Positions 292-64,000 of a DNA stretch of 64,000 bases are shown here, one piece after another. The notes beneath the pieces were generated by a model, which was given only the letters and a program-made list of their open reading frames with translations, was not told where the DNA came from and did no database searches. The stretch is from Mizuhopecten yessoensis. Its lineage: Eukaryota. The DNA lies in the NCBI RefSeq assembly GCF_002113885.1, contig NW_018408629.1, positions 2,251,971 to 2,315,970 of the forward strand, in the 5' to 3' direction. Numbering within the stretch: position 1 is the stretch's first letter; every line of letters begins with the position of its first letter. A program made the position numbers and the translations under genes.

Positions 292-526
292 AATGTGTAC
301 CTCATGGTGAAAGGCGAGTTCACTATACACCGCCACACGACCACCTTAAATAAGGGTCAGCAAAAAAACAATGCAGAAGATAGGATATTTAAAATTGAGA
401 CATATTTTTGTGTTTGACCAAAGTGTCATTTTAGGTATCCTTATGTTTTTTTTTGATATCTGGATAGTTTTACAAACACACATCCTGAAACAGATGTAGT
501 TTTAGTTTGTTTTCGGATGTTTCCAG

Positions 527-21364: not shown

Positions 21365-22430
21365 GGGTTACATCTGCAGTTGGTGTTACACTAACGGTTC
21401 GGGTAAAACTGATAGCTAGGGTTACACTTGCAGTTGGTGTTACACTAATGGTTGGGGTAACACTGAGAGCTAGGATAACACTGCAGTTGAGGTTACACTG
21501 ACGGTTTGGGTAACACTGAGAGCTCGGGTTACTCCTTCAGTTAATGTTACACTAACGATTGGGGTAACACTGAGAGCTAGGGTTACTCCTTCAGTTAATG
21601 TTACACTAATGGTTGGGGTAACACTGAGAGCTCGGGTTACTCCTTCAGTTAATGTTACACTAACCGTTGGGGTAACATTGAGAGCTAGGGTTACTCCTTC
21701 AGTTAATGTTACACTAACGATTGGGGTAACACTTAGAGCTAGGGTTACACTTGCAGTTGAGGTTACACTAACAGTTGGGGTAACACTTAGAGCTCGGGTT
21801 ACTCCTTCAGTTAATGTTACACTAACGATTGGGGTAACACTTAGAGCTAGGGTTACACTTGCAGTTAATGTTACACTAACGATTGGGGTAACACTGAGAG
21901 CTAGGGTTACACTTGCAGTTGAGGTTACACTAACAGTTGGGGCAACATTGAGAGCTCGGGTTACTCCTTCAGTTAATGTTACACTAACGATTGGGGTAAC
22001 ACTCATAGCTAGGGTTACACTTGCAGTTGAGGTTACACTAACAGTTGGGGTAACATTGAGAGCTCGGGTTACTCCTTCAGTTAATGTTACACTAACGGTT
22101 GGGGTAACACTTAGAGATAGGGTTACACTTGCAGTCGAGGTTACACTAACAGTTGGGGTAACATTGGGAGCTAGGGTTACTCCTTCAGTTAATGTTACAC
22201 TAACCGTTGGGGAAACACTTAGAGCTAGGGTTACACTTGCAGTTGAGGTTACACTAACGGTTGGGGTAACATTGAAAGCTAGGGTTACTCCTTCAGTTAA
22301 TGTTACACTAATGGTTGGGGTAACACTTAGAGCTAGGGTTACACTTGCAGTTAATGCTACACTAACAGTTGGGGTAACATTGAGAGCTAGGGTTACTCCT
22401 TCAGTTAATATTACACTAACGATTGGGCAT
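21365..22430. repeat. 54-bp minisatellite, ~19 copies, two interleaved variants
   Basis: gttggggtaacactgagagctagggttac[tccttcagttaat|acttgcagttgag]gttacactaac; 18-codon period, open in one frame on each strand. Confidence 0.95.
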
Positions 22431-22506
22431 CGCATTGATAATTAGGATAACGCTGGTGGTTGGGGTTACATTAACGTTTGAACTTGGATTACACAAAATA
22501 TGTGGG

Positions 22507-22888
22507 GATACATTGGTTCGGGTAACGCTTACACTTGCGTCTGGGATACCAATAACGGTTCTGGTAATACAGACTGATACATTGGTTCGGGTAACGCTAA
22601 CACTCGCGTCTGGGATACCAATAAAGGTTCTGGTAATACAGACTGATACATTGGTTCGGGTAACGCTTACAGTCGCGTCTGGGATACACTAACGGCTCTG
22701 GTAATACTGACGGTTCGGATTATATACAAATATGTGGGGACACATTGGTTCGGGTAACGCTTACAGTCGCGTCTGGGATAACACTAACGGTTCTGGTAAT
22801 ACAGACTGACACATTGGTTCGGGTAACGCTTACAGTCGCGTCTGGGATACCACTAACGGCTCTGGTAATACAGACTGATACATTGGTT
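22507..22888. repeat. 69-bp tandem repeat, ~5 copies, related to the 54-bp array
   Basis: gatacattggttcgggtaacgcttacagtcgcgtctgggataccactaacggttctggtaatacagact. Confidence 0.88.
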
Positions 22889-24599: not shown

Positions 24600-26225
24600 C
24601 TGCTGTAGAAGATATCTACAGTACAGGCAATATAATCAGGTACAGTGTATCTCCTATGGTAGATATCTACAGAACAGGCATTACAATCAGGTACAATGTA
24701 TCTCCTATTGTAGATATCTACAATACATGCAATACAATCAGGAACAATGTATCTCCTATGGTAGATATCTACAGCACAGGCATTACAATCAGGTACAATG
24801 TATCTCCTATGGGAGATATCTACAATACATGCAATACAATCAGGAACAATGTATCTCCTATTGTAGATATCTACTATACATGCAATACAATCAAGTACAA
24901 TGTATCTCCTATGGTAGATATCTACAATACATGCAATGCAATCAGGTACAATGTATCTCCTATGGAAGATATCTACAGTACCGGCATTACAATCAGGGAC
25001 AATGTATCTCCTATGGTAGATATCTACAGTACAGGCAATATAATCAGGTACAGTGTATCTCCTATGGTAGATATCTACAGAACAGGCATTACAATCAGGT
25101 ACAATGGATCTCCTATGGTAGATATCTACAGTACCGGCATTAAAATCAGGTACAATGTATATCCTATTGTAGATATCTACAATACATGCAATGCAATCAG
25201 GTACAATGTATCTCCTATGGTATATATCTACAGTACCGGCATTACAATCAGGGACAATGTATCTCCTATTGTAGATATCTACAGTACCGGCAATACAATC
25301 AGGTACAATGTATCTCCAATGTTAGATATCTACAGCACAGGCAATAAATCAGGTACAATGTATCTCCTATTGTAGATATCTACAGTACCGGCACTACAAT
25401 CAGGTACAATGCATCTCCTATGGTAATTGTCTACAGCTTATATAATTACAGGCAAGAAAATCAAGCACAATGTATCTCATATGGTAGATATCTACAGTAC
25501 AGGCACTACAATCAGGTACAATGTATCTCCTATGTTAGATATCTACAGTACAGGCATTACAATCAGGTACACTGTATCTCCTATGGTAGATATCTACAGT
25601 ACAGGCAATATAATCAGGTACAATGTATCTCCTATAGTAGATATCTACAGTACATTCAATTTAATCAGGTACAATGTATCTCCTATGGTAGATATCTACA
25701 GTACAGGCATTACAATCGGGTACAATGTATCTCCTATGGTAGATATCTACAGTCCAGGCATTACAATCAGGTACAATGTATCTCCAATGTTAGATATCTA
25801 CAGCACAGGCAATAAAACAGGGACAATGGATCTCCTATTGTAGATATCTACAATACATGCAATACACTCAGGTACAATGTATCTCCTATGTTGGATATCT
25901 ACAGTACAGGCATTACAATCAGGGACAATGTATCTCCTATGTTAGATATTTACAGTACCGGCAATACAATCAGGTACTCTGTACCTCCTATGGTAGATAT
26001 CTACAGTCCAGGCATTACAATCAGGTACAATATATCTCCTATGGTAGATATCTACAGCACAGGCATTACAATCAGGTACAATATATCTCCTATGGTAGAT
26101 ATCTACAGGACAGGCATTACAATCAGGTACAACGGATCTCCTATGTTAGATATCTACAATACCGGCAATACAATCAGGTACAATGTATCTCCTATGGTAG
26201 ATATCTCCAATACAGGCAATACAAT
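24600..26225. repeat. 51-bp minisatellite, ~30 copies, with an internal palindrome
   Basis: Unit acaatcaggtacaatgtatctcctatggtagatatctacagtacaggcatt containing the palindrome GTAGATATCTAC. Confidence 0.95.
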
Positions 26226-42235: not shown

Positions 42236-42425
42236 TATTCCGTCTTTGCGTATTGCAGAGTTATCTTCTATTGTGAGCAGGTATTGGTTGTTACGTCATT
42301 GGTTTGTGAGAGTAACGTCATCAATTTTTGAGAAAACAGCGTAGTTTTCTCACACAACCCAATGACGTAACAATCAATCCCTGCTCACAAGAGAAGATAC
42401 CTCTGCAATACGCAAAGACGGAATA
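42236..42425. mobile_element. 190-bp palindromic TA-flanked MITE (Tc1/mariner-type ends)
   Basis: Near-complete inverted symmetry tattccgtctttgcg...cgcaaagacggaata; same family as 33914 and 58927. Confidence 0.92.
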
Positions 42426-42601
42426 ATCATATAGGTATCTATAGATGACACAGTGCAAATACTATGCTTAAATAGTGTCTCCGCGGACCTTATTGCACTG
42501 TCTCAGAGTTCCTATTTCGTCTACGAGTATTTAAGTTAAATGTTTTATTTAACTTATCTGAGATCTTTCTGATTTTAATTGTTTCAGAGGAAGCTTTAAG
42601 G

Positions 42602-42653
42602 ATGCTGTGGCCACTATGCCTGTTTCTGTCGGTCACATTTGCTACATCAAACG
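42602..42653 (+). CDS. Signal-peptide exon of the neuropeptide precursor (exon 42588-42653)
   Basis: ttgtttcag| acceptor at 42587; aggATG at 42602 gives MLWPLCLFLSVTFATSN+G; the phase-1 donor G|gttggt joins the phase-1 acceptor at 59595 to give ...ATSNA/SIYY. Confidence 0.75.
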
Positions 42654-45600
42654 GTTGGTATATTTCTTATCGAAAAATAATCTACTTATCTTGACATTTT
42701 AGAGCATTTTGATCCACTGCCATATTTGTGGGTGCCCACTGATATCTTTAGTTTCCCCTTCTTACTTTGGCGCTATGTTATATGCGTCATATCTGATTTG
42801 CTAAATGGAGGTTATTGTTTTGTAAAACATGCCACACTTGTGTTGTGTTTTCTGTCGCAATCAATTTACAATATCGTATTATGCCGCAAAAGCAAAATTT
42901 ATTTCCAAACCACCAACGTTTAGCATTTTGATACATCGCAAAACACTCTATCAATAGATTTGTTGAAATATTAAACTGCAAACGAAATTATCTGCGACAA
43001 AATATTCAACATCAAAAGTTTCTGTCAGTAGAAGCTCCCCTGATCTCCAACCATCCAGCTAAACAGGCTTTTTATGTTTAACTCTATTTTAAGATTTCAT
43101 TCATTGAATGTCCATGGTGATTGTTAAATAATTTTGTAATACATTTTAAGCCATGTTGTTAAGCTTATTTCTGAAAGATCTTACATATTAACATCAGAAA
43201 ATCAATAATGTACTTGCATGTTTTTAAATCATAATCCATAAATAGTGTATTTTATGGTCCCGCTATCATTTGCAGTAACGTAATAGTAAAACCTATGACA
43301 TGTATACATATAGAAAGAATTAATTATGTCATGATATAATCTGATATTACTACAGTATAGAGTTTGTTAAACTCATTTATAGAATCACAAGTTCACTAAT
43401 TCAAATCAAAATTGAGCGTACGCCAGACTAATATGTTATAGCTTATAAAAATAATTTTTAAAAGAATGGTCTATTTCTTATACAGCATTCTATGGCTGTT
43501 TCATTAACAAACTTAGTCGATGTCCAGATTTGTTTAGCATGACAGTTAAAAATGTGGGACAGATACGAGTGTGCGTGATATGCGCGATAAACAAAGTGTT
43601 ATCTTTGACGACAGATAAATAAATCAGTTGCATTGCTTTAATTACATACATCTAAACCTCTACATATGACTACGCCACATGGTATTACCGAGTTACTAGG
43701 AATTTGCTTCGAGCACATAATTTTGTGGTATACATGCGAATAGGGTCCCACGTGTTTTAGACAGGTTGCGTGTTTTTTAATCATGAACTGTTATATAAAT
43801 ATTTACCGCTTACTTACATATACCATTCATTAGTGATAACATGCTATTAAGAGCGTAGATATACTCGATGACTTTATTCTAAAGTAGGAAAATGCCTTGT
43901 TGCATGAACATGTGATGTTGCACAGAAATATATATACAGAGATTAGCCATATATCGGCGTACGATTAAATACACACGACGCATACCAATTATCACAAGGA
44001 ATGCCAACTAATAGTTGTTTCCATGATTTGTAAAGGAAAACTGATTTCTTTCCTAATCTCAAAGTAAGATGGGCCCGCTGTGGGATAGTCCCGATAGAAC
44101 GGAGGTCTGCCCCATACTGCTTCACTTGGAATTGCATGTCGGATACAGCTCCGATCGAATGAGCTCTATAGGATTAGGACATGGGGAGCAAGTTGGTTTG
44201 CTTAAAATACTCTTCTTATCAGACAACCAAGATCTCATATCGCTAAAATAAACGTCAAGGCGGGATTGTTGGAAGCACAGTAAGCTTTAAGTTTTGTTAA
44301 CGAAGGTTTTCAAATACGTGTAATATTTTCATTATTGTTAAAATCGAGTATGAAAACTGTATGCGTCATGAATTTGGATGCTCTTTTTAAGACATAAGCC
44401 CTGAAAACACTTCTGAAAATATCAGAAAATATTTTCTCCTTTATTTTCGGTAAGTTGACGATGCTTCTAATAATAAGACGTAGGGAGTATTTTTGTGAAG
44501 ATTGGTTGAATTAAGTCATATTTGTGTACTTTATCAAATGAGAATTTTCCGAATAAGCTCATTGAGAACAAAATCCCTTGAAATTTCCTCGGATTTTGGT
44601 CTTAAAAAAGATCTTTCGTTTTATACCCATACATTACAGTACAGTGCACACGTTGTCTAAACATGTAGTACACAAGTCTCACTTGGATTTAATCATTTGT
44701 TTCGATGCTTGCCTTACAGATCTTCACCTCTTTTAAACAACATGCTTCAAGTCATAGATATTACGCGGGATATTCGCTACAGCGTTATTTTGCCAAAAGC
44801 ATATTATCGACATATTTCTGCGAGGTTTTTGTAATCACGTTTTCTTGCGAGATAATCTTCGCGCATATTGCAAGATATTTGTTTTGCATTTTTCTGTGAG
44901 TTATTTGTCATTGCGTTATTTACTATCATGCTATTTTGCAAGATATTTATTTCGTGTTATTTTGCAAGATATTTATAATTATTGCATTATTATGCTACCT
45001 ATTTACCATCGCTTTATTTCGCGAGAGGAAACGATCGCCAATTCAGATACGTAACAAATATAACTATATAACATATAAAAAAGCATATAAATAAATAATT
45101 ATTTTATTGGTACACACACAATACATACATACAATCCATAGACACGAAATGAGTAACTATAATAAAACTTAGGTTATAAATATATGATTATTTTAGTGTT
45201 ACACATACAATACATAGAAAGCTTCCTCTAATAACACGGTAAAGTTAATATAAATCTTCGATATTCCTATTCCTATCTTTAAAAGAGAAACTCGCCGAGA
45301 TATCTGGACAAGACTGATCACCACCCAACGAAGAAACCTTTGGTTTTGCTGACTTTGAAACGGAAAATGTCATTGCATTAATTTTAAAGATGATACATCT
45401 TGATACAACTGATATCCGGTGCATTTACAACTTTATCATAGTGCGCCATTTCGCCAATAGTATTACGACTGCCTAAGTAATTGAGACCGTATCATTTTAT
45501 TTTAAGACAATTCCTACGGATTGATTCATGTACGAGCATCTTGTGGTATGTTCTAATGTTAAAACTACATTACATTACTATTCGGGTATTTGCGATTTGC

Positions 45601-48600
45601 GTGACACAGGGTAATTATTAATTTATTACACATTTAGTAGGACAGCTATTGATCTTAACTCATAGTAAATAGTCATCGCCTTGTTTGACCGACCAGTAAA
45701 GGTGTAAATTGTTCCAAGGATTCCGATAAACAAACGTATCGCTTGCAACACGTCATGTAAGTGCTACATTAAATATGTCACATGAATCATAATTATACGC
45801 AATGGAAAGTTAATGGAATCTGTTTCTACTTAATGCAGTTTAACAGGTCGATTCATCGGTACGGTTTGAAATCTGATATGATGATAATGATTTCATTACA
45901 AACTAAAAGCTATAGAAAGTAAAACCGACTGGCTCATTGAGAGTTGTAGTTTTGTTTCTCTCTCGATGTATTTGATATAGAGATGAACTGATACACAAGG
46001 TTGTCCCTATGGACAGATATCTGTTGTGAAATATCGTGTACTGTTATAAAAAAAATGGAAATCTATGCCAAACAAGACAGCCGTCCCTGAATTAGAACAT
46101 CATATCATGTACCATAAAATAAATTTCTACATTCTACCAATTGATATTCTCCAGGGAGGACTGGTTCGTATCAGCTTTGTTTTTCAAATTATGGTAAAAA
46201 CCATTTGAACGAAGTAACAAAAAATAAAATATCCATCACATAAAAATGTTTCCAAGATAAAAATAGTTTTGTTTGTCATCAAAAAATGATCGCATATCTC
46301 CCAATATTTGTTTTCACTACAAAAGTAATATTAACTTTTAATCAGTTCATGCTAACGTTTACTTAAAAACATGCATCCTTAGATACGTACTTTTATATAC
46401 TGTGTATCAAATATTCGTGAGTACTTTATTTCGCGGATTTACGTTTATAACTATTTCGCTGATACAAATTCTCATTGTCTGGCGGAAGTTTGAGCCAATT
46501 TTTTTTTTAATCTTTTCTACCCCTTTGGAAATATGCCATGACAAATTTGAAGGCTCTATACACAGGTACACTTCTGGATTCCTGTCTTTGACTAAAGTTG
46601 TTGGAAGGGTGCAGCAAGACTCTGTGTAAAGTCCTGTATACAAAACTCCTCTGTAATTGTCAAAATAGAATAGTCTAACAATTTGTCATATGTTAGTACC
46701 TGAATTCGATAGACAAGTTCCACAATTATTAAAGTTTCTGACCGCTGCATCGTTTCGAACCACTATTATCTTTCAAACTATTTATACATTCTTTGTTGTA
46801 ATGACTGTTCACGTGAAAGCCAAGATTAAGCGGACAGAGCTTAGCTTTATTTTTAGACTTGTCATATACAACACATAGAAACAATGTGACACTGGTTAGC
46901 TTACATTCCTTCTGAATAGATTTTTCAGCGGTTTATAACGCAATGAAATTGATTCAAAATATCATACTCTTTCTTTTTATATATATAGTTTTTAATGAAT
47001 TACATCAAGAAAGGCCTGTCCATTATATTGAAGAATACAAATCAATCAGGGACACCCATCTTAGAATAACAAAGTATACTATGGAATGTCCTTTGTACAG
47101 TCGCATTAGCAGCTGATGTTGAATAGAAAGTGAAACAGTAGGATTACTGGCACTTAAAAGAGAAATATTCCCTAAAACACATGGTAGATAATAGAAAAAC
47201 TGGCTAAAAGGTGGCTGTATTAAAGCAGATCGGTTGCAACTATGATATTTTAACGGACACAGACAGTGTTGAAACATGACCGTTGCCAATTTTCTTTTGT
47301 CGGTGTTTCTTCCCGAGTTGATGTAGTGTGTGGTGCAACAAAAATGTCATTATTTGTGTAGCTGTTAAAATCATTGTTATCATACAGGACGTCAATTTTC
47401 TCTAAAGCATCTACTTTTCGTGAGTAAATATTATTTATAGTAAAGTTATTAATTTCGCGAAATAATCAATTATTGATTAAATGTAGTTCTATAATAATAT
47501 ATACCTCACTAGATATGATTCAGAATGGGTGTGTATTAAGACGATAAAAAATGTGCGTTCATTTTGGGACATTTTTTAAATTTCATATGGCGAATTGTCA
47601 AACTAACAGAGCTTTGAACAATAGGGACTTTCCGTCTTGTTGAAGGGACATGTACCGCTAACATCGAAAATCTATTCGTAACCCCTCGGGACTCTAATGA
47701 CCCCGCATTGTGTGTAGATCCTTCAGATTCTGCTATACTTAATACATGGTTTACAAAACGCTATTTGTATTCAATGAATATATTGAACGCTTCAAGATAG
47801 CTCCATGCTGATATACAATCATATCATCAATAGCGGATATACATATTGTCATGACAACATCTGAGGTCCGAAAACAGTCAGGATTTATTTGGTGTTTGTT
47901 ATGTTTTGGGAATAAAAATATAATAGAAGCTTTAATTTTAACCAGGCTGTACACGTGTAATAACCGTATCTTAGACGAGGAAGTGTTCTTTGCAAAGTAT
48001 TAAAACTTGCATGATTCGTGTTGAAATATAGTGACATTGGAGGTTAGAAATATTTATCTTATATATATATTAACAAAAACGTAGTTATATGATTATGATG
48101 AAATAAAATGCACTCGTGGCTTCAGGGATGATCATTACATGATGTGCTTCATGTTATTCAAGACTAACCACATAACATGCAGAATTCACAGAGAATACAA
48201 CGCACTAAATAACAATGTCCCAGGGCATTATCCTCAAACTGAGATGAGATAAATGTGTCCGGTCTTTTTCTGTCAATTCCGGTCGTCTAGTCCCAACATC
48301 CGGTAAGCAGGACATAAGAGGTTGAAACAAACATTGATGAATTTAGATGTGGTAATAGTGTGAGCGTATGGTAGAGTTAACCAATACAGACTTGTTTACG
48401 AGGATCGCTGGGCCCTAGCCTAAAGTGCTTCCGTAGATCTAGACAAAATCAGCCCTTCTTTTCAAGTTGATGTCGGCACTATTACAAACAGGAATATCCA
48501 CACAAGCATAAAAATGTACGTAAAGGTTATCATGGAAGGTANTGATATACATAGTTCAAAGTACAATAAGGCGGTGGATCAATGACAGCCGCAAAAGGTT

Positions 48601-50265
48601 GCGCAAACTTGGGGTATATCGCTTCTTTCTCCATCTTTTAATTTTTGCTTCATTTCTTCCCCCCCCCCCCCATTTTTTCAAAACGAAAATTAAAATTCTT
48701 GCTACTTTAAACACTGACCTTACGTTACGTTCAGGTCTTTAATTCCATGTCTGTACTTACGGTGCTTGTCAGTAAAGGGGATACCGCTTTTACCCCTCCC
48801 CATCCCATGTTTTTAAAAAGTTCGTTAACTAAGATGAAACAATCATATCTCTCTCTCTAACAACCGTATAGTTTGATGATACAGAACCCAACAGAAGAAT
48901 ATAGGGAAGCCAGTAGTGTTAATCGACTGCCAGAAGGGATGATAAAGTATAATAATGGTTTGGATAAGGAATAATTCCTAACATACAGAAGCCACCTTAG
49001 TCACATCTAAGTGGGACGCAACGGTTTACTCGTGTGGAGGAGTGGGCGGACAGGTGTTCGATTCCAAATACCTAGAAATATACATCAAAATAAGTTTCAT
49101 GTTCAAAAGTACCCCTTCCGTTCTTATTGGTTATTTGAATGACGAACCGGGAGTAATGAAACCGTGTTCTGTTTATGTCTGCAAAACTTATTTAATAATA
49201 TACAGTTAATGAATAGCTAGTTCTTTCATATTAATCAATAGCTCCATAATTTGAAATTAAAAGCATTAATATTCTTTTACATGTCATAAAACGGTATTTA
49301 GCATACGACTACGTAATTTCTTTTGATGCGTAAATGATATCGACCCATGATTGCCTTTGATTTATAATTATTTTGGTTAAGGAAAAGTGTGTAAACTTTA
49401 CGGGTAGGGCCGATCTGTTTACAATGTTATAGATTTTTCTTCAATTAACATTCGTATTTCCGGTTCCGCCTCGAGTACTGTCTGTGTTTTGATACACCCA
49501 CATTATACCCAGTATACTGTATTTGAGGTTTTAAATACTTTTTCGATTGCCGAAGGGTAACACTTCAACTGCCCGTATTTACCCTGATTTAAATATCCCA
49601 TTAACGACGAGACATGGTTAATCAATACAATCATCAAGAGCTTCCACGAGACGAACATTATATATCGATGTGCCCTGACAGTGTGTAAATTTTTCCGCGT
49701 GTCCTAACACCATAGACCATACCCCCGCCTACCAACGCACAAGTTGAGACAATCTTGAAAAAATATTAATTATTTGAAATCATAAAAAGGATGGTCAAGT
49801 TTCCTTATAGATCCTCCTGCTTCCACTTATCTTTCTCATTTCTTCACTGTTTCTCTACAAATTTATTGATTAGACTGGTTAGACGATTGCTTGATTGTAA
49901 ATATATACTACCTTGTTACATGAACAAATTAAATAGTTTGGCACAACTGGCGGCCAATCCCTTTGTAAATATGAATGCAATCAAATTTGTTTAAATTAAA
50001 AACCACACAAGTTATAGCTGTTATATACAGAGAGGTCACTATACACTTTTAAAATTTTGTAATAGACACACAGTATACCAAAATCAATTACAATGCATCA
50101 TACAGCTGTTTCGTCCATCTAGGACTCCTCGTTTTCTTGGAACCCTTTAACTTATAAATGACACAACTCAAAGGAGACAAATGTGGCCATCCAGGCTACA
50201 TCAAACCTTGTGGACTAAAAATGAGAAAAGTCTATCACCTTGTAGATTGTGAGATGAACGTAACA

Positions 50266-51881
50266 CACAAACACAGGTGATACAAACACAGGTGATACAA
50301 ACACAGGTAGTACAAACACAGGTGATACAAACACAGGTAATACAAACAGGTGATACAAACACAGGTAATACAAACACAGGTAATACAAACAGATGTACAA
50401 ACACAGGCAATACAAACACAGGTGATACAAACACAGGTAATACATACACAGGTAATACATACACAGGTGATACAAACACATGTGATACAAACACAGGTAA
50501 TACAAACAGGTGATACAAACACAGGTAATACAAACAGGTGATACAAACACAGGTAATACAAACACAGGTGATACAAACACAGGTAATACATACACAGGTG
50601 CTACAAACACAGGTGATACAAACACATGTGATACAAACACAGGTAATACAAACACATGTGATACAAACACAGGTAATATAAACAGGTGATACAAACACAG
50701 GTAATACAAACACAGGTGATACAAACACAGGTGATACAAACACAGGTAATCCAAACACAGGTAATACAAACAGGCAATACAAACAGGTGATACGAACAGG
50801 GGATACAAACACAGGAAATACAAACACAGGAAATACAAACACAGGGGATACAAACACACGTAATACAAACAGGTAATACAAACAGGTGGTACAAACAGGT
50901 GATACAAACAGGTGATACGAACACAGGTAATACAAACACAAGTGATACGAACACAGGTAATACAAACACGAGTGATACAAACACAGGTAATACAAACATG
51001 CGATACGAACACAGGTAATACAAACACAAGTGATACAAACACAGGTGATACAAACACATGTGATACCAACACAGGTAATACAAACACAGGAAATACAAAC
51101 ACAGGAAATACAAACACAGGAAATACAAACACAGGGGATACAAACACACGTAATACAAACAGGTAATACAAACAGTTGATACAAACACAGGTAATACATA
51201 CACAGGTAATACAAACACAGGGGATACAAACACACGTAATACAAACAGGTAATACAAACAGGTGATACTAACACAGGTAATACAAACACAGGAAATACAA
51301 ACATGTGATACAAACACAAGTAATACAAACAGGTAATACAAACACAGGTGATCCAAACACATGTGATACAAACACAGGTAATAAAAACACAGGTGATACA
51401 AACACATGTGATACCAACACAGGTAATACAAACACAAGTTATACAAACACAGGTAATACAAAAAGGTGATACAAACACAGGTAATCCAAACACAGGTAAT
51501 ACAAACATGCGATACGAACACAGGTAATACAAACACAGGGAATACAAACAGGAGATACAAACAGGTGATACAAACAGGAGATACAAACAGGTGATACAAA
51601 CAGGTGATACAAACACAGGTAATACAAACACAAGTGATACAAACACAGGTAATACAAACACATGTGATACAAACACAGGTAATACAAACAGGTGATACAA
51701 ACACAGGTAATACAAACAGGTGATACAAACACAGGTGATACAAACACAAGTAGTACAAACACATGTGATACAAACACAGGTAATACAAACAGGTGATACA
51801 AACAGGTGATACAAACACAGGTAATACAAACAGGTGATACAAACACAGGTAATACAAACAGGTGATACAAACACAGGTGAT
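50266..51881. repeat. 13/15-bp minisatellite, ~110 copies (intronic)
   Basis: Units acacaggt(g/a)atacaa and acaggtgatacaa; source of the CITCV/VFVLP ORFs. Confidence 0.97.
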
Positions 51882-54800
51882 CAAATAAGTACAATTGATC
51901 AATCCAACACTTCGTGGTTACTAAAACGTTGAATGTAGGAAAAAAGTTGGGTTCATTGTAAATTGTTTCCAAATTACATTCATGCAGGATCAGAAAACAT
52001 ATTGCTTAGAATGTTGATACAGAATTGTTACAATTCTGTTGGAAGATGGATAATATAGACCGACTTAAATGATTAGACTGATAAATAACTCAATGTTGTA
52101 ATAAATATTTATGAGTATGTATGAATTATTTAATTTATTAATAGCAACTGAACAATTTAAGATTTTGTTCAAAGAGTTGATATTCTATAAAAACTCATCA
52201 TGGGCAGATACACCTTGCTATTGTAACTTCACAAGAGGCTTAAGTTCGTGATTCGATGGGCTGTTCAGGCGAATTAATTGACACTTATATAAATATTTCG
52301 TGATTGACAAAATATGTTTTTGCATAACTTCTCATAAGATCCGACTCCAGCGACCGGAAGAGCTGGTAATTCTAAAGTACGATAATGGCAACTACCATGT
52401 ATTGACTTGATGTCTAATGTTCGTGCTAATAACTACTAACATTAATAATTAATGATTTCGTTCTGTCTCAGATGTTGCAATGCTTGATGTATACGCCCAC
52501 AACTTCTTAATTGCTATCGTGAAATTCATATAAACAGTAAAATCGTCATAGACCCATCTTGCATTTTGGAAGGCCATTTATCATTCAATGGTAATTTAGC
52601 TTCTTTCGGTACCTCCATTGGTGATTAAGGAATCCCTTTGACTATTCAGTGTCAATAAAATATGTTTAAAATTAAATCAATCGATTGGTGTTGAAAAGGC
52701 CATATTTTTTGCACGAATTAGTAGTGTTTTTGTAGATTATTCCAGAAACAAATTCAATTTGTGAATGCTGACCGAAGTTAGTTATGATTTTATTCTTGTA
52801 TCACTCCTGTCTTCAACTTTTATATTACTATTGAGTTAAAAAAGGTTATGTATAAAACATTCAACAACAACAACAACTCCATCCCCAAATAAAAAACCCA
52901 ACAAAAACAAACAAAAACAAAAACGGAAAGATGAACCCAAATCTTTGTAATGAAACACCATGAACCGTCTGTTGATTTCTTACAATCTAATTGTTAATGA
53001 TATTAATTGTTTTAAGTCTGGATCTGGTATTTGTACCGAGATTGCTTATGTATAGGGTTTTTATGCTTCTACCACCTGTTTATTTATAGACAGTGCTTGT
53101 ACAGTTCAAGTTTGATTTCCTACGAAATATATCAACGAATCTGTAAGACCTCAAGCCACCCAAAGGACGATTTTGTATTTATTGTCGCATTTCAGCTATC
53201 CTATGATATATGTTTGACTGTTAAGTTTCAACAAACTAACCAAAGATGGTATAATCACCCAATTGTTCAACATTTTGATAAGTTATATTTTAACTCTAAA
53301 TTAAACATGAAAATTCAGATTTGTAATTTTGATAAATTGCGCTTTTACTCAAAATTTTCAAAATGGTAATGGAAGCGACGTTAACTAAATGTAGTGTAAG
53401 GCATGAGGGCCGGTGTTCATAATGACATGTCTATCTCTTTATCAACCTAAAGGAATGCTATGAAGTGACATATTACATATCATCTATATACTAAGATCAT
53501 GTAGCGCTTATTTTCTGTTAATAGCCTTGGAGATAGAAACTGGCTTCAAACCAAGATGGTTTCGGCTTTGTAAACCGGCAAAATTCAGTGTGAAATAAAT
53601 GCTCTGTTAAAATATTGTATCGGTACAGCACATGTACTTTACAACAAAGAGCCTTGTGACCGTAATAAATAAGATAACCTATACCGTGTCCTTTTTGTAA
53701 CATTCAGTGTTACAAGCTAGGCATGCTTTAACATTATAACCGTTATGTTAAACAGAATGTTATGTGGTACATTATTTTAAGTTCATCGTAAGTGCTTATG
53801 TCATTTTCCTGTGTGTAAACTGTTTATTACTGCCTGTTGCCCAATTCCTTTGTATCTAAAATCTTAACAATAAATATTCTGAAATGAAAATCTTAAGTTC
53901 AATTCATTTAGCATTCCTATTCTTATCCACAGTTTATTATGATTTAAGTTGTTATTGCATTGCCACGTCCATCTTGATTTGAGACCGGTATGCCTCTACA
54001 GAGCTTGTAAAAAAGAAATTAAGCTCCACATTTTTAAGAATATCATCTTGTATCATTCAGTTGGTTCTCAAAATCCATTGCTATGTCCTTAATGCTGGTG
54101 AACTATTTTTTTGTGAAGATATCAGCTTTAATGCTTTTATTATTGTCTACGTTATTGACGATAAGTACCATTTTAGTAACTATGGTGAAAAGTCAATGTA
54201 TCAAAATTGAATACCTGACTTGTAGTATTTGTGACTTATAACGGGGTTTAGGGTGAATATACTATATGTTAGGGCTTCTTGGACATGAAGGGAAAAGTCA
54301 TTCCCTCGACGTCAAGATTACATATTGTTAAACTCAGCTGCCATTGTGGTCAGCTTTGCCATTGTGGTCAGCTTCTACATCGCGTGTATATTTTGGGGAT
54401 CTTGTTCTAGACCCTCTTTGCAGCATGAATCGATACTCCACTGAAAAAGAAACGCATAAAGAAATGTTTCGATACAGCTACTTCTCATCTATAACACACA
54501 CACATCGCCAGCTTCGATCTATTTGTGGTCTTTGAATCCTGTCACCAGCAGAGAGCCAATCGAATCCGGCGATTGATGAAATTGGCATCCCTGTTATTAT
54601 TCGGTTCGACCTTATAATTAAGGACGGGGCCAGTTATTCTTCTCTTTTTTGGCGTCCCTTCGTATTATATGGTCTGCCACGAACATTCAAACTATATAGT
54701 TGTTAATTATCATAGACTTCATATTATAAGTATATTTTATCATTTCCTGGACCATAACACAGCGAAAGACATCTCTTTCAGATGAATTCTGTGGAAACCT

Positions 54801-55355
54801 ACCCTTGCTAACAATAGAATTAATCATTCTTATGACGTGGGAATGAGTCTCTTCAGGAAATAGAATTAGCACAACCGAATCTATAATTAATGGCTATGTT
54901 TATGTATATGACTCTGGTTATGAGATATGAACAATATATATTGATGTTTTTCACAACATGAATCTCATAACTTGACGGGACTCCAATATGTATTCATTAG
55001 CATCGGCAAGTGCGATTATCGATGACAGTTTACCTTAACGTAATATCGACAGTGAATAACATCGCTCTAGAATTCATTATAGAAGTATGAGGCGTGTTTC
55101 AATAGAAAGTAGTATTGTGACGTCATCATGTGATAACTGACTAACTGGAAGTGAGAAAGACTCCGAAAATGGACTGGTTGAACGAAAAACTCAGCCAAAG
55201 TATCGGTTGCTGATGTACTTTCCTGCATGAAACAGACATTGTGTGTGGTATCTCTCCAGAATACAATGCTCAATTTGTCTTTTCTTTATGTCAGTTTATA
55301 GTGACTTTTTGGTGTCACCTTTGGTGCTGTTGCTGTCATTTCTTGTTGCCTTTAA

Positions 55356-55438
55356 CCCTTACACCACTGTAGACCATACTGGACTCATCCAAATAAATAC
55401 AAGGTAGAGTCTATTAAAGTTACCTAGGGTTGAAAGGG
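55356..55438. mobile_element. 83-bp TTAA-flanked mini-transposon (piggyBac-like ends)
   Basis: TTAA|CCCTTACACC...GGTTGAAAGGG|TTAA; a related truncated copy lies at 6851. Confidence 0.75.
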
Positions 55439-58400
55439 TTAATCGAGACCCGATGTTGTCCTTGTACGTATACGAAACATCATCGAAATTCCATTGGTTA
55501 CGCTGACTTACGTTCTCTGCACTCCTGGAACATGGCATGGAAACATCGATAGCACACGGTTAGTTGTTTGACTGGTTTTATGTAAAAAAAAACACCTCAC
55601 TAATCGCTATGCTTATACCTAGCCGTTTTAAGATTTCAAAGAGCGACATCCGACGTCAAAGCAAGTCAATTTTAACGTTATGGTGCCGCGCGATTCTGTT
55701 GATGTACAAAACAAAGTATCAAACTTGTCTTTTGGAAGCATTCACAAGGTAATGATTACATAACCATCGATTACATCATGACATATTCCAGGAGTGCAGT
55801 GAACATGAGAGTGCTTAACACCTGAGTTTTAAAAAACAATGGTAATTAGTTGGTTTTGGGCTGATGAACTGCTATGTAATGTAGCAATATGGTAAATCGA
55901 CTCATTTTGTCGGAAAACTGTACACAATTCTACTTGATAATGAATGAGTTTATAGACGGCCATATTGAAAAAACAAATTAAGTATTAAATTTCGTCAATA
56001 TTACTAGGTGATAAATATTTTGTCATTTTGGGATGTATACTTTCACGTTTTACTATTTTTTCATGAATATATACCAACTATGATCAGGATATACGAAATT
56101 AGTCATTAGTTGTATATATCAGTCATTAATAATACACATCACACTCATACCACATAACACTAAGCAGTAAATACCGTTTGTACTCTTTTTGATTCATCAG
56201 TTCCTGTGTGATCTTTCCATACCAATTTTGTCCCCGCGTGTTGACGCGGTTGTACATTGTTTATACGAACGTTACCCTTTTATAATAAGTCCGTTTTTCC
56301 AAATAGCGATGTCTTCAATTACACTTGATGTAGGATCAGACACAACTAATCTCCACTTTATATAGGAATATAATATGAGTTGAAGCCACTACAGACCGTC
56401 TATGAATCATGTAACATGGCCTTAACAGATTTCAAATAAGGCTATCCATTTCATATTTATATCAGTTTGTATTGCGTGCTAGACTTAACACTGAGCTTTA
56501 AATCAATAGCAATTACTATGAATATAATTGGACATAACATTGGATTTGATTTCAGAACAACAATTCACATTTTGTTTTGAATAAGTGTTGAAAACGATTA
56601 ATCATCTGTTGCTTTGATTACAGGTTGTTTAATGCAAATGGGCATACATCTTTATGCTACATTCCTAAAATGAGTTTTAATATACATGCATATAAGGACT
56701 ATGTTGTTCTAAAACGTATTTTAACGGATCGTAACATATATTCAACATACGGCTATTAAGACATTATTTCCATTTATTTTCAGTTTTTTTTCACATTTTG
56801 ACATTTCTTGTAATGTATTAAAAGCGGAATATCTAACAAAAGAACAATCGCATATACTGAGAGCAATGAAATTTCATTGTTTATTCATTCGCTTCAAAAT
56901 CTATCCCAACTGCACATGACATGAAATCGCACAGGAATACTTTCAAATGCTAGAATTCGCAGTCTTTCGTTTACACCCAGGAGTAAAAACTCAGTTAGGG
57001 GAATGAATAAAAAACCCACTTGGAATGATATAATGAAACCCCTGTAGACTTATTATTCCATTCTAAGATGGCCAGCAGACAGACATCTTAAATTTCAAAA
57101 GTTAAAGTGGTTTAGCTCTTTTCTCAGAAAATTTCACGTGAAGGTTTCCCATAGTTGAGTATATTTAATCTTCGGACTGATTGTGAAACCAAGATGGCCG
57201 ACAGCTGATCATCAAATAGGAGATAAGATTGTTGTCACTATTTCTCAGACATTAGTTCAGGGCTCTTTCTCAAACTTCATCTTTAGGTTTCCCGTGGTTG
57301 GTCGTTGTGCACATTTCATTTTGATTAGCAAAATAAGATGGCCACCAGACATCTTTATTTTCGACAGTTCTAGTTTGTGTTTATTTCCCAAGACGTAATT
57401 GACAGGTCTTCCATAATATCAAATGTAGGTTTCCCTTGTTATGCATTAAACGCTGGGCTAGTAAATTGGCCAAAAGACATTCTCACGTTGAAAGAACAGT
57501 GTATATATATAAACACAGGACACGATATTGTTGCTGCGCCTCATCGTGCTCTGTTATATTTTTGTGTAATCTAAAGAACAAAGGGTTGACGGCTTTTAAT
57601 GATGGAGAACTATGTCATTGTATATAAATTGAGATATGTAGGTGTATTCGTTGGACTAGTGGCTTACGTTATCTGCATTTAAAAAATATGAGATTGGTAC
57701 AAGAATGATGACTATAAACACATTACGTGAAGAAATATGAAATGTCATACATATTTTGCTGGCTACAATTGAATTGAGAAAGGAATGTCAAGCAATGTTT
57801 GACAATAAAAAGAAGGATGATCATTGAAAAAGAGCACACATGTGAAATGATAATAGCATTTGTATGAACAAAAATATCGACATTATGATTTTTATCTAAA
57901 GATCTGAACATATTAGCCGAAGCAGACAGACGTTTAACTGGCTTTTATAGCACTTCGATCCTAATAATTTCTATATAGGAAACAATATTTTTGAAAATAT
58001 ATATGTTTTCAATCCGGACAAACAAAACCCCTCACATGTATGCAGACAAACACCCGTTGTAGACATGTATGTATATGTATCAATGGAAAGTTTATTTCTG
58101 ACTAACACAATGGTGTTTGTGTTTTATTATATTGATAAAGGCTAATAAAATTATAGGGCAAATGTTTTCAGCTGACATTCATACTATTTTTCTTTCATGA
58201 AGTGATTTATTCGCTCAATCAATATTTATTAGCGGTATTGCCAACAACCTAGATAGCCACTGCATAATATGAGCGGAGGATAATTGACCTTCTCTGTCAT
58301 GTTACATGATATCATATGAGGTGATTTAATTTAGTGCTCCCGGCGAAGTTGGTTGCCCTCTTCATAAACTGTTTACTGGTGGACATTAAAAATACAAAGC

Positions 58401-58926
58401 TGATCTGCTACACCTAGTTACACACGATGTCGTTATCTTTCTCTCTCTCTCTCTCTCTCTTTTTCCAGATAAAGAAATATGTGTACCATTTTAATCTATT
58501 CATTTAAAAGTCCAATACGGTTTCTATAGAAGCATATACAATAGAAAGACACATTTGTGCTAATGTTACAGTTCTAGCACAGAATTCATAAAAGATTTAA
58601 ACTAAAGTCAAAATGAATGTTTAAGATTTTTCAAGTCCAAATCACAATGTAATTTTGCATAGAAGCACATAAATGTATTGTAAATCTGAATTGCTGAGCT
58701 ACATGTGTACTGAGGAGAAATACCAAGGGAAATAGTTATTTTTCGACATCTGAATGTTTTAGTTAAGATTCAACAACAAGTAATAAGTAACCCCTTATTT
58801 CAACTGTCCCTAAAGTCATATTTAAAGACCTGGTTAAATATTTAATAGAAGATATTTAACTTGCATATATCTAACTGGGATATATTAAACTTGTACTTAT
58901 ACTTATTTAAATGGTACATAACGGCA

Positions 58927-59116
58927 TATTCCGTCTTTGCATATTGCAGAGTTATCTTCTCTTGAGAACAGGTATTGATTGTTACGTCACTTATTTAAGA
59001 GAGGAACGTCATCAATTTTTGTGAAAACGACGTAATTTTCTCACCCAAACCAATGACGTAACAATCAATACCTGCTCCCTAGAGAAGATAACTCTGCAAT
59101 ACGCAAAGACGGAATA
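58927..59116. mobile_element. 190-bp palindromic TA-flanked MITE
   Basis: Same family as 42236-42425; ~480 bp upstream of the main neuropeptide exon. Confidence 0.92.
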
Positions 59117-59594
59117 CTGAGTCTATGATAAGGCATTGCAATTAATTTCTTCAAAAAATAGATCATCGGCATTATAACATGGGAATCTCTTTCGCAACCC
59201 ATTTGGTTACGAAGTGACATTTGTTTAAATAATTAAAGTTGAAGCTCAGTACATCAAAATTGCATTTATGAATTCCAATGCTTAAGTGGGTTTTTTAATT
59301 CGTTTTGTAACTCATCATTGGTTATAGTGACCATATCATCTTTAAGGGAGCTTGTTGAGCCTTAAGTTTAAGACATTTAAATGATCCTTGGGACTTTTTT
59401 TATAAATACTACACTTCAATTCAGTTCATATCTCTAAAACAGATTAACATTTTTTTTTAAAAAATGATCAAGTATTAGTAAAGGTACATGTTAGTTAGTT
59501 TGATGTAAGTTTGTATTTCATTATTATATCATATTTTACTTCAATTCGTTCTGCGATCAAAAGTTTCATTTTCTCTATATGATTGTTTTTGCAG

Positions 59595-61369
59595 CTTCAA
59601 TATATTACGAAGATAACAGAGAACATATACTGGACCAGGGTGTCGAAGAACCAGGAAGTTCAGACGGAGTTGTAGACGACGGACCATACAGTTTCAAAGA
59701 ACGTCCAGAAAAAGATGAAGGCCTTACCTATGCACCCCGCTATTATGCTCAATTTCCGGTTGACGATATGGAACAACCGGTTGTGATTGGAGGAAAAGGT
59801 TACACATTTGGTAGGCGTCCAAATGTATACGGAGGATATGGACTTGGCAAACAAAACGGACAACAAGACGAGTATATTTTAGACGATGGTGAACCCTTAT
59901 ATAACTTCAACGACCGTGGCAATAAAATGGCGACTAACAAGAGATACTTTGTGTTTAGAGGAGGGAGACATCAGCTTGGGAAGAGACCATTTGTTTTTGG
60001 AAGTGGTGGATACTTTGGGAAAAGAGACGACGACGACGATACTGACGATAACAAAGCTACAGTAAATAAACGGCCATTTGTGATGAGGGGCGGTTACAAC
60101 TTTGGAAAAAGGGATTCCGGTGAACCTGGAGAAACGCTACTGAAGCGACCATTTGTCTTAAGCGGTGGCTATAATTTCGGAAAACGTGACAACGATGAGG
60201 ACCGTGTACAAAAGCGACCGCTTGTTCTAGGTGGAGGTTACAAGATCGGTAAACGGCCTTTCATATTAGGAGGTGGTTATAAGTTTGGAAAACGCAACAT
60301 TGACGACGGGGAACAAATTAACACGATCAAAAGATTATTCGTCTTAGGAGGAGGGTATAAATTTGGCAAAGGACCATTTGCATTTGGTAGTGGATACAAA
60401 TTTGGTAAAAGAGAAGTTGGGGATGACGATGTACAAAAACGACCATTTATTCTAGGAAGTGGCTACGATTTTGGTAAACGGTTCTTTGCTATGCGCGAGG
60501 GACATATTTTTGCAAAACGTGACATGAAGAATGATGAAGGCAATGAAATAGAGAAAAGGCCGTTTGTTTTAGGAGGAAGATACAAATTTGGGAAACGTCC
60601 ATTTGTCTTTGGAAGCGGATATAAATTTGGAAAGCGTGGCATGGGCGAGTTTGAAGACGATGAAGAAATTGAAAAGCGGCCATTTGTTCTTGGAAGTGGT
60701 TATAACATTGGGAAACGTCCATTTGTTATGCGAGGTGGTTACAATTTCGGCAAACGTGGTCTAGATAATGAAGGTGACATAGTGGAAAAACGACCATTTG
60801 TGTTTGGAAGCGGCTACAAATTTGGAAAACGTCCATTTGTACTTGGAAGTGGCTATCAATTTGGTAAACGAGCAGATCCGGAAACAGAAATTGAAAAAAG
60901 ACCGTTTGTGTTGAGTGGGGGGTACAAATTTGGAAAACGTCCATTTGTGCTAGGAGGCGGATACAAATTTGGCAAACGCGCTGACATGGCCAAAGAAGTC
61001 GAAAAACGTCCCTTTGTGTTAGGTGGCGGGTATAAATTCGGGAAACGACCATTTGTTTTAGGAGGCGGATATAAGTTTGGAAAGCGTGATAACCAAATGC
61101 ATACATCTGCAGGAGAATCTCTATCAGAAGGCGGTAATACAGGCTTGGACACCATAGAGGAAATTACAAAACGTCTATTAGCATCCAATTACAACTTTGA
61201 AAAACGCCCATTTACGTCTAGTAATTCATTCAAACTTGGTAAGCGCGATCCCGAGATAACAGACTTCGAGGCAGAAACTACCAATGACGAACTGCACAAG
61301 GCGGATAACAGCAATGATCTCAGCCAACATCCTACCGTAAATAAGAGAAGTACCATACTGAAGGGTTAG
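59595..61369 (+). CDS. Main exon of a multi-copy amidated neuropeptide precursor (PFVx7amide type, e.g. PFVLGGGYKF-NH2)
   Basis: tttttgcag| acceptor; 591 codons to TAG; about 20 KR-[P/L/F/Y]F[V/I/A]xxGYxF-G-KR units separated by acidic spacers. Synonymous codon variation between identical peptides indicates a real coding sequence. Confidence 0.95.
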
Positions 61370-63638
61370 AGCTTGATCGAGGTTATTCCGACACACATAA
61401 ATCCCGCATTCAAAAGAGATCTCTTCTCGGCGATTGGTAAAAAATGTAACGTTTTTGCATTTCAACTTCCGGAAACAGAATATTCTATAAATTAAAAAAA
61501 AAAAAATGAAAATATGTGATGTTGCAAACTGTCTTTCTTTCAAAAAGTAGGAAACAAATAAAAAACGAAAACAGTTTGAGAAACGGCGAGCCGCCATTGA
61601 TGTGTTTCTTGTCTATTTCTGGAGAAAATAGATATTGAATGATTTACCGTGCCACTTTGACATCATACGTAACGTCAATAAATGCACGTGAGCGTATTCC
61701 TGGTGAAAAAATAGGTCATATTACTGAGCCGATTGTAAATGGACAGACATAGTATATACGTTAATCTCGCAGACTGTTATGTTAGTGCTTCAACAGACAA
61801 GGAAACGTCCCACGCCCACGAATTCAAAGCTGATGAAAAGAACAGACTGGCCGTCAGATATCTTTGTGTCTTTCGTGTGTGTATGTGTATGTTTCCAGAC
61901 AATGTTCAAAGATGTTGTAGTCAGCTATTATACATTTGTCGACGTAGACGAACGATAAATTGATGAGACGATGCTGACTCATATGCTATCAGTTTGTTTA
62001 GCGAGGTTGGAACCGTAAAACTAATTAATAAGATTTTGTCATTTTTGGAATTGATAGTGAGAAATTTCATTACTGTAAAAGTATCTGTAATAAAATTTCA
62101 TTTTGGATTGAAAACATAATAAGTATCATAGTTCAAAGGATCTTTTATCATGTAATGTTAAAAGTAAAGCATGCATCTTAAAATGTGTAAACGCAAAAAG
62201 GCGTCTTATTTCAATAGTATAGCATTTCATTTCAAAGAAACATTCAAACATGTAAAGACGGGAAAGACTTTTGGTGAATTATACCTACACAGTGATGGGG
62301 GTGGGTGGCACTTTATTTTTTCTAATTTCCGATCAATCGTTTTCGTGTCAGTATTGCACTGTTCATGCAGCTCATAAGTGTTCATTGGTACCTTCCATGT
62401 CTGGTAAATCATTTAGACTTGCTAAGCACGATGATTATCATGTGTTCATTGGTACCATAGATCTTCGCAAACTCTTTAGCAGATGAGCTATTAAATCCTC
62501 TACCTAGGGGATTTACTATCAGCCACAGACAGTAAGAAACTTTGAACAAAGAAATGTTCATAGGTGTATGGCAGTCGTGTACACTCCGTAAAGTGAATAT
62601 TCTATAAACTCCTTCTTTGGTTAAACATTATGGTAAAACAACTGTTTATTTGTGTAAATCCTAGCTACAAGATTAATCAGGCATTCAATGAGGTTAGTCA
62701 AATACTTTTTTAGAGTCGACTGACGTCTTTTCCGACGTCTATAGAAAATCCTGAACAGAAATTGTTATACGCATTAAGCACTTGGATGCTTTGCTATTTT
62801 TTGTTCCAGATGATGAAAATTCAGATAAGTTATAGTCTATCCTATAAAATAGTTTAATTCATCTTTGTTAAAATTTACAGCCTGATTATTTTGTCAAGTT
62901 ACCTTCTTTCGTATATATATATATTTTTGGCATTTTTCATTAAATGTGGGACTGCTAGTTAATGTGCAAAGTGAATGCTGCCGTGTGCACAGTATATTCC
63001 GGGAAAGGTTATATTGTACATTTTATTAATAGGTAAAGGTTAAGTGTTTATTGACTTTAGTCCATGTTGTTATTTGTTGTTTGGATAATTTCAAATAGTT
63101 CTTGTTTATGTGCTTGTGGATATTTTTTTTTTTTATGTTTTCGTGATTTTATCACAAGTATAAGTGAATATTTCGAACTTTTATGTTTTCAGTGTTGAAA
63201 GGCGTTTCTCCGAAAGGACCAACACTGTCTGGAAAAACTGTTGACAAGTATGCATTATGATAGTTTAAGGTTTGGTTGTTATCCCATGAAAACATCGCCA
63301 TGGCAATCATACGAGTCGACTCTGTAATAACTCTGATACTCGTTAAATAAATTATTTAATTATTAAATTATTAAAAAGTATTCAATTTTGATCATTTAGA
63401 TATGGTATTTGAACTTTAAAGCTAAAAGTGCATCGCATTGTCAACGGAAACAGTGTTTCGTAATTTCAAAATATTTTCTCCCTTGTTGAGTTCGTAATAC
63501 TATATTGAGTACTTTGAGTATCCCCTTGATAGGGAAACACATATCAATTATAAAATTTTGTCTTAGATATGCTAGTAGTGCTTTGATAAATTATTGTATT
63601 TTTCCAAAATATGTCTTTGTTTTCGTTAACATGAAATG

Positions 63639-63644
63639 AATAAA
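63639..63644 (+). terminator. Candidate distal polyadenylation signal of the neuropeptide gene
   Basis: AATAAA followed by a GT-rich tract; more proximal AATAAA signals at ~61557 and ~62089. Confidence 0.35.
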
Positions 63645-64000
63645 TTGATATCTTGTCAATCTGTGTTTTGTAGTTCATTACAGAATATAGCTGTTTTAAA
63701 TGAAACTGTTATATAGAGGCTAATGGTATGTCCTATATCTTAAAACCATAACAACCTTGATCTGCCCTATTGAAATTTAGTGCTTGAACACGGCATACGG
63801 GAAATATTGTTTCAAAAAGGAAGTAAAAACAAGAGTACCACGGGTCGGGACAATGTACGCCCGTCGTTATGTACTTTCTTACATTGAAATAAGATCTCCA
63901 TCATTCTAAGAGTGGTTAGCTGACATGCTATGTAAATTGTAGGATCACGAATACTCATGATCCATTCAGTAGTTCACGAGAAGTAGCGGTAACAGGCTAA

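What the first reader, a model, noticed from the sequence alone, without database searches (positions are those of the whole stretch)
59595..61369. Large polyprotein neuropeptide precursor releasing ~20 PFVxxGGYxF-amide decapeptides
Seen: KR-flanked, Gly-extended peptides PFVLGGGYKFa (x3), PFVFGSGYKFa (x2), PFVMRGGYNFa (x2), PFVFGSGGYFa, PFVLSGGYNFa, PFVLSGGYKFa, PLVLGGGYKIa, PFILGGGYKFa, PFILGSGYDFa, PFVLGGRYKFa, PFVLGSGYNIa, PFVLGSGYQFa, PFAFGSGYKFa, YFVFRGGRHQLa and PFTSSNSFKLa. Established: KR sites are cut by prohormone convertases and a C-terminal Gly is converted to an amide by PAM. The PFV + 7 residues + amide pattern matches the molluscan PFVx7amide family as I recall it, so the family itself is probably not new. 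Inference: to my knowledge its receptor and physiology are uncharacterised, making this a candidate orphan signalling system with many ligand variants from one gene.
Basis: partly seen in the sequence, partly recalled or inferred. Interest (0 to 1): 0.85.

Follow-up and report, generated by a model that had tools for sequence, protein, structure and literature searches.

The report
Known scallop PFVx7amide neuropeptide gene
This is the Yesso scallop's already published nerve-signal gene, which is cut into about twenty near-identical short amidated peptides; the peptides were already detected in scallop ganglia, and no receptor for them turned up in the papers I could search.

Summary
Window 59595-61369 (+) is the main coding exon of the Patinopecten (Mizuhopecten) yessoensis PFVx7amide precursor (PMC5996578; MH045244, PY_T16467, XP_021370506). 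That paper found it in a ganglion transcriptome and detected its peptides by LC-MS/MS, several amidated.

A signal-peptide exon lies 16.9 kb upstream (42588-42653), also noted by this scan (s1-519516). Three RNA-like runs from three studies show the splice and a 3' UTR to about 63655. The precursor is 608 aa, with 18 peptides cleanly flanked by KR and GKR.

Two corrections: the PFAF peptide follows KG, not KR, and the PLV peptide is an allele (PFV in all three RNA-like runs).

Probable orthologues occur in oysters (PFGx8amide), pearl oyster, mussels and chitons. The pearl-oyster precursor carries both PFG- and PFV-type peptides, so the two names probably denote one family, with a mostly aromatic-x-hydrophobic amide tail.

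I found no receptor or physiology paper, so "orphan" stands within the library searched. Most likely target: a GPCR for aromatic-amide peptides (inferred). Verdict: already known, low interest.

The parts
42588..42653 (+). First coding exon (66 nt); ATG at 42602; 52 coding nt give the signal peptide, ending in a phase-1 GT donor
   Evidence: Matches the published N-terminus; its 3' end is the loose end joined to 59595 in runs X9, X11, X18 (table 7)
42654..59594 (+). 16,941-nt phase-1 GT-AG intron
   Evidence: Sequence; RNA-like contigs start at 59594 while the DNA run continues upstream
59595..61369 (+). Coding part of the last exon: acidic spacers and all peptide copies, stop TAG at 61367-61369
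   Evidence: no indel in this stretch in 4 runs (table 4)
59780..59848 (+). Two N-terminal Gly-extended candidate peptides without clean dibasic flanks (PVV...YTF-G, then RR, then PNV...YGL-G-K)
   Evidence: similar segments in the same order in homologue P0001; processing not shown
59945..61081 (+). Main array: 16 PF/PL-headed decapeptides and one YFV-headed 11-mer, each KR...GKR flanked, plus one pair joined by KG (60335-60406) and one unamidated copy (60482-60514)
   Evidence: six of the full-length or truncated peptides and two spacers seen by MS in ganglia, five entries amidated
61208..61240 (+). Last peptide, PFTSS-headed decapeptide with amide Gly; a conserved C-terminal-region copy
   Evidence: A PFT/PFMT-headed peptide lies in the C-terminal fifth of 6 bivalve homologues
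61370..63655 (+). 3' UTR of about 2.3 kb; AATAAA at 63639
   Evidence: One contig of run X11 spans 59594-63655 (table 8); hexamer list

Best explanation
This is the scallop PFVx7amide neuropeptide precursor gene (oyster counterpart: PFGx8amide). Shown: it is transcribed and spliced into a 608-aa prepropeptide with a signal peptide; it is expressed in ganglia; peptides cut at KR sites and C-terminally amidated exist in ganglion extracts. From established knowledge: signal peptidase, then prohormone convertases cut after KR, carboxypeptidase E trims the basic residues, PAM turns the Gly into an amide, and the peptides are stored in dense-core vesicles. Inferred: the near-identical copies act as one high-dose ligand pool, not as twenty separate signals; the amidated aromatic tail (G-Y-K/N-F-amide) is the part a receptor reads; the receptor is most likely a rhodopsin-type GPCR (about 0.75), with the protostome W/Y/F-amide clade, including the orphan lophotrochozoan FMRFamide-type-1-like receptors, the best first guess (about 0.35); the likely job is modulation of neurons or muscle.
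For: Published identity, accession numbers and MS table. Splice and UTR in three studies. Codon-position pattern and chance control. Homologues in Mytilus, Pinctada, Crassostrea, Saccostrea and a chiton. All five genomic homologues checked have a phase-1 intron shortly after the signal region and all peptides in one exon. The tail [YF]-x-[FLIVM]-amide is in 16/18 scallop, 31/36 Pinctada plus P0004, 9/13 mussel-like and 6/7 chiton peptides while the head varies. PMC8557429 argues that orphan receptors of this clade should take peptides with an amidated aromatic C-terminus.
Against: Nothing argues against the identity. The receptor and function steps have no direct evidence: no assay, knock-down or localisation was found. 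The tail is less constant in oysters (9/19) and P0001 (3/15), where the PF head is the constant part, so the head may matter as much. Similarity among repetitive KR/G-rich precursors inflates E-values, and a phase-1 intron after the signal peptide is common in secreted proteins (own knowledge). Synteny could not be shown.
Confidence: 0.95

Rival explanations
1. Same gene, but it is an amidated offshoot of the pedal peptide/orcokinin family and acts through that family's still unidentified receptor, probably as a muscle relaxant or ciliary/motor modulator.
For: The Lottia PFGx8amide precursor is labelled 'pedal peptide-like' in the De Oliveira data set. [quoted passage not shown] Snail pedal peptides also start with PF after KR. 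Starfish and sea cucumber members relax muscle; no receptor was known as of 2017.
Against: Scallop peptides lack the Asp-Ser-Ile core of pedal peptides 1 and 2 and are amidated, whereas those are mostly not. The scallop has two separate canonical pedal peptide genes. No pedal peptide appeared in three homology searches. The molluscan members of that third group were not visible in the supplement, so its overlap with this family is unconfirmed.
Confidence: 0.25
2. Same gene, but the peptides gate a DEG/ENaC channel (FaNaC-like) and give fast transmission instead of slow modulation.
For: Molluscs and annelids have channels gated by amidated aromatic peptides (own knowledge; named as a possibility in PMC8557429). 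High copy number would suit the high concentrations such channels need (inference).
Against: No evidence specific to this family; most characterised multi-copy amidated peptides act on GPCRs (own knowledge).
Confidence: 0.12
3. Same gene, but it is a paralogue of the lophotrochozoan proenkephalin-like ('opioid') precursor that lost its cysteine-rich N-terminal domain.
For: Chiton and P0070 peptides begin [YFW]-G-x-[VIL]-L, like the YG-x-L-F head of molluscan and annelid opioid-like peptides. PMC8557429 files cysteine-domain brachiopod precursors in the same group as the PFG-headed nemertean ones.
Against: No cysteine in the scallop exon, nor in the chiton, Pinctada, Saccostrea or M. edulis homologues. 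The scallop has a separate opioid-like gene. The resemblance is of short Gly-rich motifs and was not tested statistically.
Confidence: 0.12
4. The ORF is a minisatellite or assembly artefact and makes no peptide.
For: The window holds several minisatellites with long open frames.
Against: Spliced RNA, MS-detected amidated peptides, synonymous-site divergence, homologues.
Confidence: 0.01

Closest known systems
PFVx7amide precursor of Patinopecten (Mizuhopecten) yessoensis (PMC5996578; MH045244; PY_T16467; XP_021370506)
   Same: The same gene: same signal peptide, spacers and peptide order as printed in the paper's supplement (compared by eye); three coding SNPs seen in RNA-like runs restore the published residues.
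   Different: The printed sequence stops inside the array, so the window adds the last four or so peptides and the C-terminus relative to that figure; a few allelic or text-extraction differences.
PFGx8amide precursors of Crassostrea gigas, Pinctada fucata and Lottia gigantea (PMC4200219)
   Same: KR-Pro-Phe heads, amidated tails, acidic spacers, same intron layout; PMC5996578 treats them as counterparts; the full Pinctada protein P0006 carries PFG-type peptides in its first half and PFV/PFT-type in its second.
   Different: Oyster peptides are about 12 residues with Gly in position 3; scallop peptides are 10 residues with Val/Ile in position 3, as if two residues after PF were lost (inference).
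Pedal peptide/orcokinin family, in particular 'pedal peptide 3' of PMC8557429
   Same: Multi-copy, KR-flanked, often PF-headed, Gly-rich peptides with a hydrophobic end; receptor unknown as of 2017.
   Different: No Asp-Ser-Ile core; amidated; not found by sequence search from this protein.
Aplysia PRQFVamide and Mytilus inhibitory peptides (source of the RefSeq name 'PRQFV-amide-like')
   Same: Multi-copy amidated peptides starting with Pro.
   Different: Those end in P-x-F-V-amide and are 5-6 residues (and own knowledge); here PFV is the N-terminus and the scallop has separate MIP genes. The RefSeq name is a similarity label only.

Membership tests
PFVx7amide / PFGx8amide precursors | N-terminal signal peptide | tested here: met
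   Exon 42588-42653 encodes the published signal peptide and is spliced to the main exon; no predictor was run
PFVx7amide / PFGx8amide precursors | Many KR-flanked copies of P-F-V/I + 7 residues + amide Gly | tested here: met
   16 core decapeptides, 18 KR-x10-G-K motifs against 0.07 expected
PFVx7amide / PFGx8amide precursors | Identity with the type sequence MH045244 | tested here: met
PFVx7amide / PFGx8amide precursors | Neural expression and amidated mature peptides | not testable with these tools
   Shown by others: ganglion transcriptome and LC-MS/MS in PMC5996578; oyster peptides in PMC4200219. The tissue of the runs laid here is not given
PFVx7amide / PFGx8amide precursors | Orthology of scallop PFVx7a and oyster PFGx8a | tested here: inconclusive
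   Supported by a mosaic Pinctada precursor, a shared PFT-headed late peptide and shared intron phase; synteny not shown (oyster neighbour Tim17 lies downstream, beyond this window)
Pedal peptide/orcokinin (types 1 and 2) | Phe/Leu-Asp-Ser-Ile-like core | tested here: not met
   Position 3 is Val, Ile or Thr in the scallop peptides
Pedal peptide/orcokinin (types 1 and 2) | Mostly non-amidated C-terminus | tested here: not met
   Gly before KR in nearly all copies; amidation seen by MS
Pedal peptide 3 group of PMC8557429 | Clusters with nemertean PFG-headed precursors | tested here: inconclusive
   Motif resemblance through the oyster form; no nemertean hit; molluscan members not seen in the supplement
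Lophotrochozoan proenkephalin-like (opioid) precursors | Cysteine-rich N-terminal domain | tested here: not met
   No Cys in the 590-aa exon
PRQFVamide / Mytilus inhibitory peptides | C-terminal P-x-F-V-amide | tested here: not met
   C-termini are Y-K/N/Q/D-F/I-amide
Ligands of the protostome W/Y/F-amide GPCR clade | Amidated aromatic C-terminus | tested here: met
   Phe is last in 14 of 18 peptides; necessary-looking but not sufficient
Ligands of the protostome W/Y/F-amide GPCR clade | Activation of such a receptor | not testable with these tools
   Needs a cell-based assay

The most novel reading that the evidence does not exclude
PFVx7amide and PFGx8amide are one ancient molluscan (perhaps spiralian) family, defined by the amidated G-[YF]-x-[FLI] tail and not by the head after which they were named, and they are the missing ligands of an orphan lophotrochozoan receptor, either the FMRFamide-type-1-like GPCRs or the long-sought pedal peptide/orcokinin receptor. 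The scallop's dominant decapeptide would then be a ready tool to deorphanise it.
Probability: 0.2. Interest if true: 0.5.

Novelty: already known. Interest (0 to 1): 0.13.

Why it matters
As a gene discovery it does not: gene, name, ganglion expression and amidated peptides were published in 2018, and the oyster counterpart in 2014. What stays open, as far as I could search, is the receptor and the physiology. This is one of many orphan lophotrochozoan peptide families, in a farmed species. The modest additions here are the full exon structure with splice support, the evidence that the two family names describe one gene family reaching to chitons, and a conserved C-terminal motif that tells an experimenter which peptides and truncations to screen first.

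Tried and rejected
1) Frameshift near the stop. Another frame just past the stop reads like a precursor tail with one more KR site (about 61352-61437). No insertion or deletion is seen there in the probable source DNA run or in three RNA-like runs, so an assembly error is rejected; a fixed old frameshift or chance remain, and no other scallop orthologue was returned to test it. 2) A blind scan for a signal exon with strict donor and hydrophobicity filters missed the true exon; it was found with short motifs from the paper. 3) Pfam: no family. ESM Atlas: only generic multi-copy neuropeptide clusters under 0.9, not informative. 4) Search with the non-repetitive N-terminal 135 residues: nothing; the tool only sees proteins of similar length. 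5) No evident orthologue in the Platynereis peptide set by motif search. 6) Literature by peptide strings and accession numbers: nothing beyond the surveys. 7) Synteny: flanks of 10 kb gave no neighbour shared with this window. 8) P0067 (hagfish laminin-like, 19% identity) rejected as a compositional hit. No structure prediction was run: the precursor is a low-complexity polyprotein. All database searches used the main exon alone, by reference; the joined model was not searched and was only translated locally to check the frame.

Full report
Observation. The window is AT-rich animal DNA (GC 0.36). Frame +2 is open from a splice acceptor at 59593-59594 to TAG at 61367-61369. Splitting at KR/RR gives 18 peptides flanked by KR and G-KR, one pair joined by KG, two copies without the amide Gly and two N-terminal candidates. 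The motif KR-x10-G-K occurs 18 times against 0.07 in shuffles and never in the other 59.5 kb. Among the 16 core units the second codon position is almost invariant (mismatch 0.009) while the third is near saturation (0.56), and 53% of codon pairs for the same residue differ. The array is therefore old and under selection as protein, not a recent DNA repeat.

Identity. A paper search for the family name gives one paper, PMC5996578. Its supplement prints a precursor named PFVx7a whose sequence after the signal peptide matches this exon, lists MH045244, PY_T16467 and XP_021370506 of Mizuhopecten yessoensis, and gives nine MS entries from ganglia, five of them C-terminally amidated. The match was made by eye, because the printed string has no reference here. 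The paper also reports Ka/Ks 0.27 against its oyster counterpart.

Gene structure. The published signal peptide is encoded at 42602-42653, in an exon starting at 42588 and ending in a phase-1 GT. In three RNA-like runs from three studies, contigs begin exactly at 59594 and continue with the 3' end of that exon, whereas the DNA run continues into the intron. The loose ends are 95-103 letters, longer than the 66-nt exon, which suggests a further non-coding 5' exon that I did not locate. One contig runs to 63655, 16 nt after an AATAAA. The joined frame is 608 aa without internal stop. Three coding SNPs in all RNA-like runs (59921, 60141, 60221) give the residues of the published sequence. No run shows an indel in the coding part, so the stop is real. 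Searches were made with the main exon only, by reference; the joined model was not searched.

Relatives. Two searches return the same small set: Mytilus, Pinctada, Crassostrea, Saccostrea, the chiton Liolophura and unnamed marine contigs. The Pinctada and C. gigas-like hits are the PFGx8amide precursors of PMC4200219. Three observations support one family under two names. The full Pinctada protein and P0004 carry PFG-type 12-mers first and PFV/PFT-type peptides after. A PFT-headed peptide sits near the C-terminus in scallop, pearl oyster and mussels. All five genomic homologues have a phase-1 intron shortly after the signal region and one large peptide exon. The chiton peptides join a G-x head to the same seven or eight C-terminal residues as the commonest scallop peptide, and a second chiton precursor of this type is in the De Oliveira data set, so the family probably dates to early molluscs. 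P0069 and P0070 share the tail but not the PF head; their organisms are unknown. Caveats: repetitive precursors match one another by composition, the intron feature is common, and synteny was not shown.

How it works. Shown: transcription, splicing, cleavage at KR (including KR-Pro bonds) and amidation. Established pathway: signal peptidase, prohormone convertases, carboxypeptidase E, PAM, dense-core vesicle release. Inferred: the copies differ mostly conservatively, so they probably act as one concentrated ligand pool. The tail [YF]-x-[FLIVM]-amide is kept in most scallop, Pinctada, mussel and chiton peptides but in only half of the oyster ones. That favours, without proving, a receptor that reads the amidated aromatic end. 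PMC8557429 describes a protostome GPCR clade activated by W/Y/F-amides, with orphan lophotrochozoan members expected to take such ligands; this is my first guess (about 0.35; any GPCR about 0.75). Rivals are the unknown pedal peptide/orcokinin receptor, a peptide-gated DEG/ENaC channel, and kinship with the proenkephalin-like precursor. The confidence of 0.95 refers to identity and processing, not to the receptor.

Comparison and novelty. It is a member, indeed the type gene, of PFVx7amide. It fails the sequence tests for pedal peptides 1 and 2, for the opioid-like precursor and for PRQFVamide/MIP, though it may work like a pedal peptide. Only three relevant papers in the library name either family (two surveys and a review) and none gives a receptor or function; subscription journals are mostly missing, so 'orphan' is probable, not certain. 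The same holds for many lophotrochozoan peptides. A specialist would not be surprised, and the receptor screen has been possible since 2018. Verdict: already known; interest 0.13.

Noticed in passing
window 42236-42425 and 58927-59116: Two copies (89% identical) of a 190-nt element with 80-nt terminal inverted repeats, MITE-like; one lies 160 nt upstream of the signal exon, the other 480 nt upstream of the main exon. Probably a dispersed repeat.
   Followed up: partly
window 61352-61437: Another frame just past the stop reads like a precursor tail with a further KR site. No indel in 4 runs; possibly a fixed old frameshift or chance.
   Followed up: partly
window 457-786 (+): Exon matching Pfam ATP_bind_1 (E 2.7e-25); looks like a GPN-loop GTPase (GPN3-like, own knowledge), the upstream neighbour gene.
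   Followed up: partly
window 21362-22888: 54-nt and 69-nt tandem arrays with 323-codon open frames on both strands (Thr/Val-rich repeats); only weak sub-threshold Pfam hits. Minisatellite or mucin-like exon, unresolved.
   Followed up: partly
window 24610-26225 and 50267-51885: 51-nt and 15-nt minisatellites giving long spurious open frames; the second lies inside the precursor's intron.
   Followed up: no
window 63866-63931: Very high-copy short repeat (depth in the thousands in all four runs), just past the 3' end of the transcript.
   Followed up: no
window upstream of 42588: RNA-like contigs carry 30-38 more letters than the 66-nt signal exon, implying an unlocated non-coding 5' exon.
   Followed up: no
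L005 15632-18350 and L006 22327-29870: In both Crassostrea virginica and Saccostrea echinata a Tim17-family gene lies just downstream of the precursor on the opposite strand: a synteny marker for future orthology tests.
   Followed up: no
L007 770-2233 (P0070) and L009 419-1252 (P0069): Unnamed multi-copy precursors with [YW]-G-x-[VL]-L-G-x-G-[YF]-x-[FL]-amide peptides from organisms not identified; possible distant members of the family.
   Followed up: partly
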